Shown: positions 40,301 through 46,300 of the stretch, one piece after another | How positions within the stretch are numbered: the first letter of the stretch is position 1 | How the letters are laid out: each line of letters starts with the position of its first letter | Source of the DNA: Dimorphilus gyrociliatus | Taxonomy: Eukaryota > Animalia > Annelida | Assembly (NCBI GenBank): GCA_904063045.1 | Contig: CAJFCJ010000031.1 | Location: 186,001-250,000 of the forward strand | Direction of reading: 5' to 3' | DNA: 64,000 nucleotides | Program-made: the position numbers and the translations under genes | The notes under the pieces: model-generated | What the model was told of the DNA's origin: nothing | The model's database searches: none | The model's input: the letters and a program-made list of their open reading frames with translations, nothing else

Positions 40301-43300
40301 AGCATGTACACAAACTATGTATAATATTGATAACGAGCCCGTGAGTTGAAGCTCTTAGAGATAAAGGTCCAGTAGAAACGAGTAGGACGACAATATGGAA
40401 GAGGAATGGTAAATGGCTAGCGACGTCCAATGAATTATTGAATGATAACATGAGTAAATAGCGAGCTAATATAGCTATATCCTCCCACATTAAGTGCTGT
40501 TCTAGCGTGGGTGTGGGCGACATACATGTCCGATCTATTAATCTACACAACCTTCCTATTACTTTTCGCGACACTAATTGAACGTTAGCCGACGCTAAAG
40601 CGACTGCAGTATCAGCCATTATCTCAGCTTGAATCGAACCTAAACCTCCCGTGACACTTCTCTGCATTGTTGAAAGAATAGCAATTTTTTATTTTATATT
40701 AAATATTAAAATTATCAATTCATTTACCTTGATAAAACTATCGAGAACCATATCTAATAAATCCGATACCTGACCAATATTACCCCAAATCTTCGCCTGT
40801 ATTGAGGGATACATTTCCTCCTCTTCAATAGTCATGGTGATAAGCTTATCGAGGATTAATGCTACTTTTTGCCTTTTAGCTTCGTCCGACTGCTTACAAA
40901 ATCTAGTCAAATTTGGAAGCCACGGTGTCATGTACTCCAAGCATAAATGCTTCATTTCAATATTTGAATTTCTGAAGCCTTGTATACACTCCTCCAAAAA
41001 TTCAAGAGTCAAGTGCGGTTCGTTCACAGCTAATTTTTCGCTTATACTTTTTATAAAAATAGTATTATTCGATGGTATGCATAAACCCGTAGTCTCCAAC
41101 AATTGACCTTCAATTTTTAAGTCGAAAGTTTGCGTTAGAGCGCATAAAAGATTATACGCCGCCGATCTTAGACTAGGATCAGAACTGCCTAGATTTAGAA
41201 GAGCCACATTTAAAAGAGTTCCAGGAACATCTTTTGGTCTAATCTTCGTATGAACTGTTACCGAATCCTTTGGGAACAAAAAAGCATAATGAATCAATAA
41301 CATAATAAACATATATTGTATATATATATATATATATAACGTATATTCTCCATATATATAGAACGTATACAAATACAACCAATTATTATATTAATTTATA
41401 TTTACCGGTTGAGATAGTTCCCATCTCGTTCTAATATGGATAATAGCTTGTACAATTGCATCGCAATCATTGTGTATAAATGATAACGGACCAGATTCGT
41501 TAGATATTGTCAAAGTAAACTGATTGTCGTCGACCAAGCAAACCTCCTCGATTTCCGACGCGTAATAGACGTCATTTAACAAGACAGAATGTCCTAGAAC
41601 CTTACTCTTTTCAGCTGAAGTAACTTGTATGGCTGTCGGGCCAACTTTTATAGCAACTTTTGTATCTTTATGAGATAATTTTAAAGCATTATTAAACACT
41701 TTCAGATCTTCTTCCAATGAGAGTGTAGCTCCAGGTAGTTTTTGTTGTTCAGTATCAATATAATCGTTTAATTTCGATGGATGATCGATAAAAACTAATT
41801 TTCTATTACTCTTCAGAGGCGATAGTATCCGATCGTGAAATTTTGTATATTCCCTTACCCAAGAATTGCAGTTATAGATAAGGGCTTGAACGACATTTTG
41901 GTATACAACCTCTGGCATCACTACAAACCATTTTGATAGAAAATCAGTTTGCTGTAATAGGATTATAAAAGAAGAGAATGAGATAAACAATATATATATA
42001 TAAATATACTGTATATATACAGTATATATAAGAATTAATTAATTAAAAAGATAGAAAGTATGCACTACTCTTAATCGATTATCCGAACACGCATGTGTAA
42101 AATCAACAACAATTTCGAATGGCTTATGGTAGAACGGCTTCAATGTCAAAAGGACATGGTAGATTAGCAAATCACCATTTAAATCTCCAACTCTGAATAA
42201 TAATAATAACAATAATAATAATTAATATATGTAAATTTATTCACAATATTTTAATTGCTTTGTTAGGCATACCTTCTTGCAATATAATAGAAAACGGGAT
42301 TTCCTAGTTTACTTGTTCCCGCTTGATAAAAGATGTTTAAATTTTTCAACGATTTAAATTCGTCTTTTTCGTGCATTTGATGCTTGCTCATAATCTCCTC
42401 GAATTTCGTAGAGCTCATATCCACCGAACTCCATTGATAATCAAAACTCACTGGCCGATGGTCCGGTGGACCTAAATAGGCTAATAATGTTGCCATTTTA
42501 TCAAAAGGTCGCCTACCAACTGCCTTATGATCACGACTGCTTGACAAATAATCTCCAATACGTTCCTGATTAATCCACAATAATCGATGTAGTGCCAAAA
42601 CATTAGCATCGCTAATAAACGACAATCCATGATTGCTAGAGTCAGAATTTTCACTCTCCGAATCGGAAGAAATTTCAACAAAGAACCTTAAAAGGTGAAA
42701 ATAAGAGGAAGACAAAGATAAATAAATGTACAGTATTAGTAATTGTATTTTTTGTTTTTTTAAATTTCCCTACTTTCTTGCTTCTTCGAAGTGTTGCCTG
42801 AGGAAATCGTTGAAGTGTCTCATATGCTGTTCTTTTGTAAACGGCAAATGATTGGCTAAGTTTTGCATAATCTTACACATGAGGGTAAGTCCTCTTTTGA
42901 TTTTTGGTGTAGGTTGTTGATCTATTATACCAGATTCGCAGGGTGATACTGTGTTATAAAAGATAATATGGAAATAATAGAGAAATTACAGTATTGTTAT
43001 CTTCTCTTTTCTTTAGTTAAGTCATTAAAAAAAAAAGAAGTTAACTCAAAAATAGTCCTATATTTCATTTGGTAACTTATTGTGTGACATTTGAATAATA
43101 TATCAAAAAAGGAGATGTTTCTCGGTTCTTATATTAGCAAGATTTTCCCCCAAAAAAAGCCTTAAAGCGTCAAACAAGATAAATAGATTGGATAATAAAT
43201 AGAAAGATAATAGATAAAAGCAAATGTTAAAGCTAGGAAAATGTCTTAACTAATTACCTATAGCCGGATTGATGAATCTCAAAAATACAACTGTCCCAAT

Positions 43301-46300
43301 AACCGTCCAAACTGAATCTGGTGTACTTTGCTGGAATCTTTGAGTCACTACTTGATATAAGCAGTGGCACATACTTCTAAGCTTTACCGGAAACCTGTTT
43401 AAGAGCGAAAGCATTCTCCAAATCACCTTTTTATTGTTTTTGTTAACAATTTCTATTATTTTTTTCTTTAAACTAATTATATACTGAAATATATACAGTA
43501 TATATATATATATATAGATATACTATGAAAATTAGTGTAACTTTTTATATAAAACAGTACATAATACGCTTTTCGAGTAAGAAAAAAAAATGCCAAGCAG
43601 TGCACGACAAATCAGGCAAAAAAGTGCTATTATAGATAAGTAAGCCCCTGTAATCCTAAACGAACCAAAAAACATGGAGCTGGGGATTTTTTTTATATAC
43701 AGTATATATACATATTTAAAAAAAAAGGAAGGAAAAAAAGAGATTATAATTTCTTGTAAAAATTATCCTACCAATAGATTTATTGAAGAACCGCAGCGTT
43801 ATAACACTAGATAAAACGTCTACAGCTTTCTCTGGAAATTTCGCTTGAACACTGATGTATAAACACTGACAAAGTTTTTTTAATGCACCGGGGAATCTGA
43901 AAAATAATTTGACAACACCAAACTTAAAAAAAATAAAACAAAAAAAAAATAAGGGGAGAAAATAAATATGAACGTGCGATTCTGATGGCAAATCATGCTT
44001 TTTTTAAACGTAAAAGAAAAAAAAAAGACCCTATTTTTAGAGCTTACCTCTCTGCGGATGTTACAATAAGATTAAAGACCGTTTGAGTTATGGCCATTAG
44101 ATTTTGGCGATTTACTTCTACGTTCTCATTTTCGTCCAAGCGTGTGGGATCAACCTCATAGGAAACGCCTTGTTTATCGCTTTCGAACATATCCGTAATC
44201 GGTTTATGTAACAGCTCGCGCAAGTAGCTTTGTCCGTAAACTTTAAAGCAGAACGCCATCAATTTACTGGCTAGACTATTGCCGCGAAATAAGGTTTGCA
44301 TGCAGTCGGCGATTTCGACCTCCTTCGAGAACATGTTCCAAAGTAGCTGATAAAGAAGGTGTTTGGCGTCGAAGAGCGTGACAAATACCCTAGCCAATTC
44401 GTCCATATGAGGAGTTGATACAACGCTTGCCAAAGCCATTGCTATGGGCAATTCACCCTTGTCGCCTATCATAGCGACTAACTCGACGAGACGCTCGAAT
44501 CTATCTGCAAGAGCAGTTTCGGCTAACGTCTCAAACTCAGTACCTTGCTGCAGGATTTTCGTAAGAACCTCCATAAAGGCTGCTCTTGTCTGTGGATCTC
44601 TATGATAACCTAGACCAATAGAATGCATCAAGCCACTATCAATATTTGCGTTTAACAAATTAGACATGGCTACAATTGTACAGTTCCTGAGGGTACTTAA
44701 ATTTGATGTAGTACGCTTTCTAGAACCATCTGGAGTAACCTTCTCTTCTGCTTCTTCTGAACAATCATTCAACAGATTCATAAAAAGAGTAAAGTATTTT
44801 AGGAATAATTGTGATTTGGCTTCCATTAAATCACCTCTATCACTCTCCTCGGGCTGAAGAGGCAAGCCTTTCAATAAAGCAGCAACAGCGTCCATGCTAG
44901 CTTGATCTAATTCTCTACAGCACCTTGAAACAGCGACGATATCGCCTTGAACGTTCAGTTGATGACTATTACCCATAATCCAATCTGTTAAATACTCTAC
45001 CATTTTATTACGAAATTTCATCTCCTGCCTAAATGGTAGATCGTCCCGTCTGTGCATCATCGCCTCAACGAGTTGACATAGTTTTGTCTTGATTTGAATA
45101 GCATGTATTGTTGTGTCAAGGTGTCGAACGTATCGAACGATTGTTAACATCAAACTTTCTATGCTTGTTATACTCAAATGCTCATTTGGTTGCTCTGTTT
45201 TATTTTCCAGAATATTCTTCATTATAAAAATTACATTCTCGATGAATTGAGTATTCGTATCCATGACAATAACTTGACTTTGGGAATCAAAAAACTTATC
45301 AACGTGCATCTTTATTTGATCGAAAAGAATCGGATATACTTTCGGATTCAATTCGTGACCAACTAATTCTTTGACATGCTTTTGAATTTGAGGCCCGAAT
45401 TTTTCGTTGTTACAAACTAACAACTTTAAAATATTGCCAATAAATTGCGTAACGGGACAATATTGCAATTCATTTGTACAACCTTGTAAAACAGACCCTT
45501 TGCGAGTTTCTGTTAATGAGGCTATTGGGCTGTTTGTAGTGCTTTCGGGTCTCGTTTTGGGTGTGTTGATGGTCGCTATCGATGAAGTTGTCACCAATGG
45601 TGTAACGGAAGAATTAACGGATGACTTTTGTAGGCATACGCTGCCTAACGCACAGAGAAAACCTGTCATATTTGCCCACTCATTAAGTTGATCCTCCAGT
45701 TCGTGGTCGGTTGTGCTTTGTTGACCTCCCCTACGCTTGCCTCCGGGTCTGTGAAGTGTCTCCGACACGGACGCCGCTGGATCTTCCGTTTTCGAACTGG
45801 TTGGCATTGTTATTGACTTTGGGTAATTTGTTAATAATTTTGTGGCGTATTCCCAAGTATTAAAAGTATCTTCCCAAGCGTGTTTATTTCCAAGTGTCTG
45901 TATATCAACTTTTCTCAATAAAGCCATAATTCGCTTTTGTAGGACGGCTCGTCCAGTTGTTAAAACTGTTGATGATGTTGCCAATTCTCCATACACTGAA
46001 TAGTTAGGGAGGGTTTGCGTTGAATCATCACCACAGCGAATATCTGATTCCTCGCATAATAAATGAAAGCAGGACATTGCAGTAAGAACAGCATCGATAT
46101 CGATACTCCACAAATACAAAAAAAATACTATTTCTAACTTGATCTGGGCTTGTTTGCAAATACGTAAATTAGCGCCGGTGTTGGCATAGTCCTTTCTTCT
46201 TAGTAGAAATTGATTTCTACACATCATTATCTCTTGTAGCCATTTTAAAATTTCTGTATAGTTAACTATTTGATGCTGAATCAACTTTTGCGAAATGGAA

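What the first reader, a model, noticed from the sequence alone, without database searches (positions are those of the whole stretch)
43258..43896. Tandem, frame-enforced mutually exclusive exons rewrite the catalytic FLR motif of the NF1 RasGAP domain
Seen in sequence: between the constitutive exons ending ...SAE(AG|) at 44048 and starting (|TA TCA CCC, VSP) at 42948 lie two homologous exons with canonical splice sites and identical phases (in 2, out 1). Exon A (43772-43896, 125 nt) encodes [41 protein letters not shown]. Exon B (43258-43394, 137 nt) encodes [45 protein letters not shown]. Including both (262 nt) or neither shifts the frame, so exactly one must be used. Established: FLR...PA...P is the RasGAP signature whose Arg stabilises the catalytic site, and vertebrate NF1 exon 23a inserts in this same segment (after CHCLYQ) and lowers GAP activity. 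Inference: exon A keeps the Arg and the C-x-C-L-Y pattern but changes F to T and INPA to FNKS. It probably encodes a GAP-attenuated or specificity-shifted neurofibromin, a convergent splicing switch on Ras signalling built by exon duplication rather than insertion.
Basis: partly seen in the sequence, partly recalled or inferred. Interest (0 to 1): 0.85.

Follow-up and report, generated by a model that had tools for sequence, protein, structure and literature searches.

The report
Either/or exon pair in worm NF1
This small marine worm's NF1 gene (a brake on Ras growth signalling) holds two alternative copies of one exon in its catalytic domain, and RNA shows one or the other is used; the pair is ancient and shared with molluscs and lamp shells, but this worm's copy A has drifted unusually far.

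Summary
Exon A (43772-43896, 125 nt) and exon B (43258-43394, 137 nt) lie on the minus strand between constitutive NF1 exons. Both have AG/GT sites and the same phase.

RNA contigs from three runs contain all four predicted junctions (up>A, A>down, up>B, B>down). None shows A>B or skip-both. By contig depth, A makes up roughly 14-43% of messages.

The pair is not special to this genome, which is contig CAJFCJ010000031.1 of GCA_904063045.1, apparently Dimorphilus gyrociliatus.
- **Molluscs:** the same 41-aa/45-aa pair is already annotated as RefSeq isoforms in Octopus, Pomacea, oysters, Haliotis and Mytilus.
- **Lingula:** both exons are in the genome with the same 125/137-nt architecture, but B is unannotated.
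- **Annelid-like metagenome contigs:** both exons sit in tandem.
- **Nemerteans:** only B remains.

So the duplication predates the split of these phyla. I found no paper describing it.

The change to the FLR motif is specific to this worm. Every other A-type exon keeps FLRF.NPAL. Here A reads TLRFFNKSI, sits on a branch about 40 times the median length, and diverges about three times faster than neighbouring exons. A weakened or altered GAP isoform is plausible but untested.

Verdict: a real, expressed, ancient mutually exclusive exon pair, and a new member of a known kind.

The parts
37366..49504 (-). NF1 (neurofibromin) gene, approximate extent of the coding region
   Evidence: tblastn of oyster neurofibromin P0196 (2821 aa) covers its residues 1-2813 collinearly across this span.
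44048..46400 (-). Upstream constitutive exon, about 2.35 kb. It holds the first half of the RasGAP domain. The 3' end is exact; the 5' end is approximate.
   Evidence: One open frame 44044-46416. The donor AG|GTAAGC at 44048 was read. The RNA contig of run X6 is continuous over 44048-44500 and joins to A or to B.
43897..44047 (-). Intron between the upstream exon and exon A (151 nt), with a long pyrimidine tract before exon A
   Evidence: Joint 43896>44048 'skips 151', ends GT..AG on the gene strand, run X6 depth 306. Sequence.
43772..43896 (-). Exon A: 125 nt, 41 codons plus split codons. The divergent alternative, ending ...[11 protein letters not shown].
   Evidence: Joints 43896>44048 and 42948>43772 in runs X6, X2 and X4. 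X6 contig is 100% identical.
43395..43771 (-). Intron between exon A and exon B (377 nt). AT-rich, with two copies of the palindrome TATATACAGTATATA.
   Evidence: No RNA contig joins A to B.
43258..43394 (-). Exon B: 137 nt, 45 codons. The canonical alternative, ending ...[11 protein letters not shown].
   Evidence: Joints 42948>43258 and 43394>44048 in runs X6, X2, X4 and X1.
42949..43257 (-). Intron between exon B and the downstream exon (309 nt)
   Evidence: Joint 42948>43258 'skips 309' in four runs.
42774..42948 (-). Downstream constitutive exon (175 nt), starting (G)TA TCA CCC = VSP
   Evidence: The next intron, 42687-42773 (87 nt), is confirmed by joints.

Best explanation
This is a genuine mutually exclusive exon pair in the RasGAP domain of NF1.

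**Origin.** It arose by tandem exon duplication before annelids, molluscs, brachiopods and nemerteans diverged.

**How it works.** Each mRNA carries exon A or exon B. Both are 2 mod 3, so taking both or neither gives an early stop. Such messages are presumably lost to nonsense-mediated decay.

**What it swaps.** The exon encodes the helix-loop segment that ends in the FLR motif (human residues 1357-1397). This is the same segment into which vertebrates splice exon 23a.
- B is the ultra-conserved form and presumably the standard Ras-GAP.
- A is the faster-evolving form in every lineage.

**This worm's exon A.** It has diverged extremely. It keeps the Ras-contacting Leu and the stabilising Arg. 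It replaces the Phe of FLR with Thr, and the near-invariant Pro-Ala with Lys-Ser. I infer that the A isoform is a neurofibromin with weakened or altered Ras-GAP behaviour, made in a substantial minority of transcripts.

**Status of each step**
- Shown: the anatomy, the either/or use in RNA, the conservation across phyla, and the lineage-specific divergence.
- Inferred: enforcement by decay, and any functional difference between the isoforms.
For: **RNA.**
- Joints up>A (X6 depth 306, X2 45) and A>down (X6 225, X2 45, X4 4.7).
- Joints up>B and B>down (X6 527-568, X2 61, X4 28, X1 4.9).
- No A>B joint and no skip-both joint.
- In X6 exon depth is 600-1000 against 22-26 in introns, so it behaves as RNA. 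It is 100% identical to the window.

**Conservation.**
- Octopus bimaculoides isoform X2 (P0153) against X1/X3.
- Pomacea X4 against X8: identical flanks, differing only in this 41/45-aa segment.
- Oysters, Haliotis, Mytilus and cuttlefish transcripts.
- Lingula genome: 125-nt A and unannotated 137-nt B in tandem, with cag|G...G|gtaa sites.
- Metagenome contigs L033, L068, L070 and L075: A then B, both 2 mod 3.
- B-type exons form a clade, support 83/80, and are 80-98% identical between phyla.

**Orthology of A.** It lies upstream of B, has a 41-residue core, and shares FP[DE][EK]A[LV]D.L with the annelid-like A exons.

**Divergence of A.**
- Terminal branch 1.62 against a median of 0.04.
- It loses 7 of the 16 columns that are at least 90% conserved in the other exons.
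- T at the Phe position and K at the Pro position never occur among 54 distinct motifs from 310 NF1/RasGAP proteins.

**Role of the motif.**
- The family motif is FLRXXXPAXXXP (PMC12871552).
- R1391A lowers GAP activity 400-fold, and L1390 contacts the side chain at Ras position 61 (seen with the Q61L mutant) (PMC7437355).
Against: - No enzyme or binding data exist for either isoform.
- Leu and Arg of FLR and the arginine finger (in the upstream exon) are intact, so A could still be a competent GAP.
- An active Dictyostelium RasGAP has LLR instead of FLR (PMC12871552). The first position therefore tolerates change, at least to another hydrophobic residue.
- Exon A's divergence from a close relative is 10 differences in 127 nt, against 4 in 135 for B. 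I cannot distinguish this from near-neutral drift.
- Retention of conserved columns in A is not significantly enriched (Fisher P=0.17).
- Logan contigs drop rare variants. The absence of A+B or skip-both messages is therefore not proven.
- Pfam RasGAP scores the mollusc A exon as low as this worm's A (22.4 against 21.8 bits). A low profile score alone says nothing.
Confidence: 0.6

Rival explanations
1. Exon A in this worm is a decaying relic. It is still spliced in because its splice sites and frame survive. The A isoform would then be non-functional or unstable, so its inclusion merely lowers the dose of working neurofibromin or is tolerated noise.
For: - Exon A differs from a close relative at 10 of 127 positions. 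Only 3.6 are expected if just third positions changed at the neighbouring-exon rate (P=0.004).
- At least one of the three differences that could be read is non-synonymous (43843, Ala to Glu). All 13 readable differences in B and the upstream exon are at third codon positions.
- A has lost Phe, Pro and Ala of the family motif.
- Its branch length is 1.62.
- Nemerteans and several unnamed contigs have lost A altogether.
Against: - A is in frame, has no stop, and has kept the ancestral 41-codon length with no indel against the relative.
- In this AT-rich DNA, 41 random codons would stay open only about 4% of the time (my estimate from base composition).
- A makes up 14-43% of messages in three runs.
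- It keeps F, P, L, C, F, L, R, F and N at conserved columns.
- It survives in a gene that has otherwise lost most of its introns.
Confidence: 0.22
2. Both isoforms are fully active Ras-GAPs. The A/B choice would then tune something other than catalysis, such as the open/closed equilibrium of the neurofibromin dimer, a partner contact, or preference among Ras-family GTPases.
For: - In molluscs, Lingula and the annelid-like contigs both exons keep FLRF.NPA, and yet the pair has been retained for hundreds of millions of years. The ancestral role of the switch therefore cannot be loss of the motif.
- The constant differences lie in the loop before FLR: a 4-residue insertion and Pro to Gln in B.
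- Exon 23a acts from the neighbouring position without touching catalytic residues (PMC12352984, PMC7437355).
Against: This worm's A additionally changes three near-invariant motif positions, which makes unchanged catalysis less likely here. No data exist on partners or on conformational states.
Confidence: 0.15
3. Exon A is an assembly or annotation artefact, or belongs to another locus.
For: None found.
Against: RNA contigs of run X6 match exon A at 100% and join it to both flanking exons of this gene. Two further runs from a roughly 3%-diverged relative show the same joints. Orthologous tandem pairs exist in other phyla.
Confidence: 0.01

Closest known systems
A-type/B-type alternative exon pair of molluscan NF1, seen as automatic RefSeq isoforms (for example Octopus bimaculoides XP_052834125.1 against XP_052834124.1, and Pomacea canaliculata isoform X4 against X8)
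   Same: - Same position in the RasGAP domain.
- Same 41-aa and 45-aa lengths.
- Same order, A then B, as shown by the fused gene models P0172 and P0367.
- B is 84-87% identical to this worm's B.
- Isoforms carry one or the other.
   Different: Mollusc A keeps the canonical FLRF[YF]NP[AV]L and is 71-83% conserved among molluscs. This worm's A is only 34-37% identical to them and reads TLRFFNKSI. The mollusc pair exists only as database isoforms; I found no paper on it.
Vertebrate NF1 exon 23a (isoform II)
   Same: It is alternative splicing inside the same helix-loop segment of the GRD. Exon 23a inserts after CHCLYQ, which is residue 14 of this exon (P0015). It modulates Ras-GAP output 5-10 fold without removing the arginine finger (PMC12352984).
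   Different: Exon 23a is a 63-nt in-frame cassette that adds a lysine-rich loop. Here a whole exon is swapped for a diverged duplicate and the frame forbids both or neither. The two have independent origins: amphioxus, Ciona and arthropods show a single form.
Classical mutually exclusive exon pairs made by tandem exon duplication (for example FGFR2 IIIb/IIIc, PKM exons 9/10; from general knowledge)
   Same: Adjacent homologous exons with the same phase, one chosen per transcript. Frame incompatibility acts as a back-up against double inclusion.
   Different: I found no evidence here for the other known enforcement mechanisms.
- The A-B intron is 377 nt, so it is not sterically too short.
- The splice sites are ordinary GT-AG.
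- No convincing competing RNA stems were found, and no conserved intron blocks in the related worm contigs.
IQGAP GRD (YYRXXXPAXXXP), a RasGAP-fold domain without GAP activity
   Same: It is a natural RasGAP-like domain in which the first residues of the FLR motif are replaced (PMC12871552).
   Different: IQGAPs also lack the arginine finger and still keep Pro-Ala. This worm's A isoform keeps the finger, Leu and Arg, but loses Phe, Pro and Ala.

Membership tests
Mutually exclusive exon pair from tandem exon duplication | Two adjacent exons homologous to each other | tested here: met
   A and B are 38% identical over the whole length, E=1e-10. Both match the same human NF1 residues. Only two copies are in the window.
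Mutually exclusive exon pair from tandem exon duplication | Same entry and exit phase, with usable splice sites | tested here: met
   125 and 137 nt, both 2 mod 3, with AG acceptors and GT donors. All four sites are used in RNA.
Mutually exclusive exon pair from tandem exon duplication | Transcripts that contain A without B, and B without A | tested here: met
   Joints 42948>43772 (skips B) and 43394>44048 (skips A) occur in runs X6, X2 and X4.
Mutually exclusive exon pair from tandem exon duplication | No stable transcripts with both exons or with neither | tested here: inconclusive
   No such joint was listed. However, Logan contigs drop rare variants and cannot show absence. By sequence both forms would carry early stops.
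Catalytic RasGAP domain (signature FLRXXXPAXXXP, PMC12871552) | Phe-Leu-Arg followed by Pro-Ala at +6/+7 and Pro at +11 | tested here: met
   For the exon B isoform: FLRFINPAI followed by VSP.
Catalytic RasGAP domain (signature FLRXXXPAXXXP, PMC12871552) | The same signature in the exon A isoform | tested here: not met
   TLRFFNKSI followed by VSP. Leu, Arg and the last Pro are kept; Phe, Pro and Ala are replaced. T and K are unseen at these positions in 54 distinct motifs from 310 proteins. The exon still matches Pfam RasGAP, at 21.8 bits.
Catalytic RasGAP domain | GAP activity on Ras | not testable with these tools
   This needs recombinant GRD-A and GRD-B.
Lophotrochozoan NF1 A-type exon (orthology of this worm's exon A) | Lies directly upstream of a B-type exon, with a 41-residue core lacking the 4-residue insertion | tested here: met
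   Same order and lengths as in Lingula (125/137 nt), the annelid-like contigs and the fused mollusc models.
Lophotrochozoan NF1 A-type exon (orthology of this worm's exon A) | Groups with other A-type exons in a tree | tested here: inconclusive
   There are only 45 columns, and Dgyr_A is a very long branch placed at the midpoint root. The shared motif FP[DE][EK]A[LV]D.L with the annelid-like A exons is the only positive sequence signal.

The most novel reading that the evidence does not exclude
The lophotrochozoan A/B exon pair is an independently evolved counterpart of vertebrate exon 23a. In this reading, animals have twice placed a splicing switch at the same spot of the neurofibromin GAP domain to set Ras-GAP strength per cell type. 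In Dimorphilus the A form has gone furthest, becoming a naturally GAP-attenuated or Ras-binding-altered neurofibromin that serves GAP-independent or dominant-modulating roles in the dimer.
Probability: 0.3. Interest if true: 0.7.

Novelty: new member of a known kind. Interest (0 to 1): 0.5.

Why it matters
NF1 is a major human tumour suppressor. Its only well-studied catalytic-domain splice variant, exon 23a, lowers GAP activity by a mechanism that is still debated.

An old, independently evolved either/or exon at the same structural spot would give natural paired variants of that segment for biochemical comparison. The pair is kept in at least three phyla (annelids, molluscs, brachiopods); nemerteans keep only B.

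This worm's exon A is also a natural experiment: it replaces Phe, Pro and Ala of the family signature while keeping the catalytic Arg residues.

On a practical level, several public gene models are wrong or incomplete at this locus. B is missing in Lingula. A and B are fused in Elysia crispata and Sepia pharaonis.

Tried and rejected
- **Short-fragment search.** A 41-aa exon A query to the search for homologous proteins, meant to recover short fragments from relatives, found no candidates. The relative's exon A sequence, and so a proper dN/dS, could not be obtained. Only 3 of its 10 differences are readable.
- **Representative search.** None of the 150 NF1 representatives carries an A-like TLR...NKS segment.
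- **Third copy.** None found in the window.
- **Competing RNA stems.** Inverted repeats in the cluster are low-complexity AT runs. Three related worm contigs share no conserved intron block. I dropped this mechanism.
- **Tree of exon peptides.** It supports a B clade but cannot place this worm's A.
- **Conservation test.** Whether A preferentially keeps conserved columns was not significant (P=0.17).
- **Pfam score as a damage measure.** Rejected, because a canonical mollusc A exon scores as low as this worm's A.
- **Genomic look-ups.** P0004 and P0198 are not on record. The longest Lineus isoform worked instead.
- **Busy tool.** The look-up of sequencing runs was busy four times before it answered.
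Full report
**1. The observation**

The gene lies on the minus strand. The sequence shows the following:
- The upstream exon ends ...GAG AG|GTAAGC at 44048.
- Exon A runs 43896-43772 (125 nt; acceptor ttttcag|A behind a long pyrimidine tract; donor G|GTAGGA).
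- Exon B runs 43394-43258 (137 nt; acceptor aaacag|G; donor G|GTAATT).
- The downstream exon starts at 42948.

Both align to human neurofibromin residues 1357-1397, the stretch that ends in F1389-L1390-R1391 and N-P-A-I. B gives E=3e-12 with a 4-residue insertion. A gives E=4e-5 with no gap. A and B are 38% identical to each other.

Both lengths are 2 mod 3. Joining A to B reads ATT GGT TTC CGG TAA, and skipping both also shifts the frame. There is no third copy in the window.

The gene is NF1. An oyster neurofibromin aligns collinearly from about 49504 down to 37366.

**2. RNA evidence**

The look-up of sequencing runs listed six runs, and I laid four of them on 42600-44500. Run X6 is 100% identical to the window. 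Its exon depth is 600-1000 against 22-26 in introns, so it behaves as RNA of the same strain. Runs X2 and X4 come from a relative about 3% diverged. X1 is a coral metatranscriptome.

All four predicted junctions are present:

| Junction | Meaning | Contig depth |
|---|---|---|
| 43896>44048 | up to A | X6 306; X2 45, with a substitution at 44050 |
| 42948>43772 | A to down, skipping B | X6 225; X2 45; X4 4.7 |
| 43394>44048 | up to B, skipping A | X6 568; X2 61; X4 28; X1 4.9 |
| 42948>43258 | B to down | X6 527; X2 61; X4 28; X1 4.9 |

No A-to-B joint and no skip-both joint was listed. Contigs cannot prove absence.

From the depths of the two alternative contig paths, A is roughly 35% (X6), 43% (X2) and 14% (X4) of messages. 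This is a rough measure.

**3. Which genome**

An intronless ORF of the window (61165-62346) is an exact product on contig CAJFCJ010000031.1 of assembly GCA_904063045.1. Earlier notes of this scan name the genome Dimorphilus gyrociliatus. That fits my memory of the accession and the very short introns reported for that worm, median 66 bp (PMC7854359).

In this gene one exon is 2.35 kb, and an ordinary intron confirmed by RNA is 87 nt. The three introns of the A/B cluster are 151, 377 and 309 nt.

**4. The pair is old and widespread**

A search of 1.84 billion representatives with the upstream exon gave 150 NF1 relatives. None had an A-like segment. Cluster members told a different story:
- Octopus bimaculoides isoform X2 (P0153) carries a 41-residue alternative where X1 and X3 carry a 45-residue one.
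- The same two forms occur in Gigantopelta, Tegillarca, Pomacea, Babylonia, Mytilus, oysters, Haliotis and cuttlefish transcripts.
- In Pomacea, isoforms X4 and X8 have identical flanks and differ only in this segment.
- Mis-fused gene models of Elysia crispata (P0172) and Sepia pharaonis (P0367) show the order A then B.

The B type is marked by QRFQQS..[DE].VWTV[IV]GT. It is 80-98% identical between phyla, and this worm's B is 84-87% identical to mollusc B.

Metagenome contigs L033, L068, L070 and L075 carry A then B in tandem, at 140 and 137 nt, both 2 mod 3 with AG/GT sites. By my unverified recollection they come from gutless marine oligochaete samples.

The Lingula genome holds the annotated 125-nt A exon and, 267 nt downstream, an unannotated 137-nt B exon. 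Both have cag|G...G|gtaa sites, exactly the architecture of this window.

Two nemerteans have B fused in frame to the upstream exon and no A. Contigs L019, L021, L062 and L063 also have B only.

Arthropods, amphioxus and Ciona show a single form.

The duplication therefore predates the split of annelids, molluscs, brachiopods and nemerteans, and A was lost in some lines. Four literature searches found no description of it, and a fifth found none either.

**5. What is special here**

Every other A-type exon keeps FLRF.NP[AV]L. This worm's A reads TLRFFNKSI. It is orthologous by several criteria:
- It lies upstream of B.
- It has a 41-residue core.
- It shares the motif FP[DE][EK]A[LV]D.L with the annelid-like A exons.

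It is nonetheless only 32-42% identical to any other exon. Its terminal branch is 1.62 changes per site against a median of 0.04.

Of the 16 columns at least 90% conserved in the other 38 exons, it keeps 9 (F, P, L, C, F, L, R, F, N). It changes 7: V>S, R>K, G>S, T>S, F>T, P>K and A>S. Among 54 distinct motifs from 310 NF1/RasGAP proteins, the Phe position is F or I and the Pro position is P in 53. T and K never occur there.

Against the 3%-diverged relative, the difference counts are as follows:

| Segment | Differences |
|---|---|
| Exon A | 10 in 127 nt |
| Exon B | 4 in 135 nt |
| Upstream exon | 13 in 450 nt |

All 13 readable differences in B and the upstream exon are at third codon positions. 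In A, one of the three readable differences is non-synonymous. Ten differences is more than the 3.6 expected under strong constraint (P=0.004), and I cannot tell it from near-neutral drift.

**6. How it most likely works**

*Shown:* each message takes A or B, and the frame forbids both or neither.

*Inferred:* wrong combinations are removed by nonsense-mediated decay. Exon choice is probably set by the contrasting splice sites: A has a strong acceptor and a weak donor, while B has a weak acceptor and a better donor. I found no support for steric, U12 or RNA-stem mechanisms.

The exon builds the segment ending in the FLR motif of the Ras-binding groove. R1391A lowers GAP activity 400-fold, and L1390 contacts the side chain at Ras position 61 (seen with the Q61L mutant) (PMC7437355). 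The family signature is FLRXXXPAXXXP, and Pro-Ala is kept even in non-catalytic IQGAPs (PMC12871552).

Exon A keeps Leu and Arg, and the arginine finger lies in the upstream exon. It loses Phe, Pro and Ala. I therefore think a weakened or altered GAP is the most likely outcome, at roughly 40%. The main alternatives are a decaying but still spliced exon, and a fully active isoform tuned for something else.

The ancestral role of the pair cannot be loss of the motif, because relatives keep it in both exons. The constant difference lies in the loop just before FLR, a few residues from where vertebrate exon 23a inserts (P0015). Exon 23a lowers GAP activity 5-10 fold (PMC12352984).

**7. Verdict**

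The rewriting of FLR is a peculiarity of this worm's fast-evolving exon A, and its function is untested. This is a new member of a known kind, of moderate interest.

Noticed in passing
L082:16890-17026 (Lingula anatina, GCA_001039355.2, LFEI02000772.1): An intact 137-nt B-type NF1 exon with cag|G and G|gtaa sites lies 267 nt downstream of the annotated A-type exon. Neither of the two Lingula RefSeq proteins seen here (P0176, P0303) contains it, so the B isoform appears unannotated.
   Followed up: partly
L083:16323-16601 (Lineus longissimus) and L084:37317-37556 (Tubulanus polymorphus): In both nemerteans the B-type exon is fused in frame to the upstream exon and there is no A exon. The intron and the alternative copy were lost together.
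   Followed up: partly
P0172 (Elysia crispata) and P0367 (Sepia pharaonis): These deposited gene models contain both the A-type and the B-type segment in series, in one case with intron-derived residues between them. They are probably mis-predictions at the either/or pair.
   Followed up: no
P0289-P0296 and other Lineus longissimus isoforms: Twelve of the 14 listed Lineus isoforms read ...[17 protein letters not shown] directly after the B segment, where the other two read ...AIVSPCESII. This suggests a second small alternative event right behind this exon in nemerteans.
   Followed up: no
window 44048-46400, minus strand: One NF1 exon of about 2.35 kb (some 785 codons) covers a region that is split into many exons in vertebrates. 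This worm's NF1 has lost most of its introns, yet the A/B cluster keeps three introns of 151, 377 and 309 nt.
   Followed up: partly
window 43489-43504 and 43694-43709; 43013-43026 and 43240-43253: The palindrome TATATACAGTATATA occurs twice in the A-B intron. Separately, a 14-nt inverted repeat (93% complementary) sits just after exon B's donor and about 65 nt before the downstream acceptor. Both are AT-rich and could be chance.
   Followed up: partly
run X1 (coral metatranscriptome), laid on window 42600-44500: A coral metatranscriptome holds NF1 mRNA pieces 95-100% identical to this worm, B isoform only at low depth. This suggests such worms live in the sampled coral system.
   Followed up: no
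P0066 (Macrostomum lignano): The flatworm's single segment is 46 residues and ends ...[16 protein letters not shown], resembling the B type (..WTVIGTV..). The B-type form may therefore be older than the annelid-mollusc ancestor.
   Followed up: no
window 61162-62346, minus strand: This intronless 394-aa ORF has a Tet_JBP domain and is annotated as a gene in the public record. I used it only to identify the contig.
   Followed up: no
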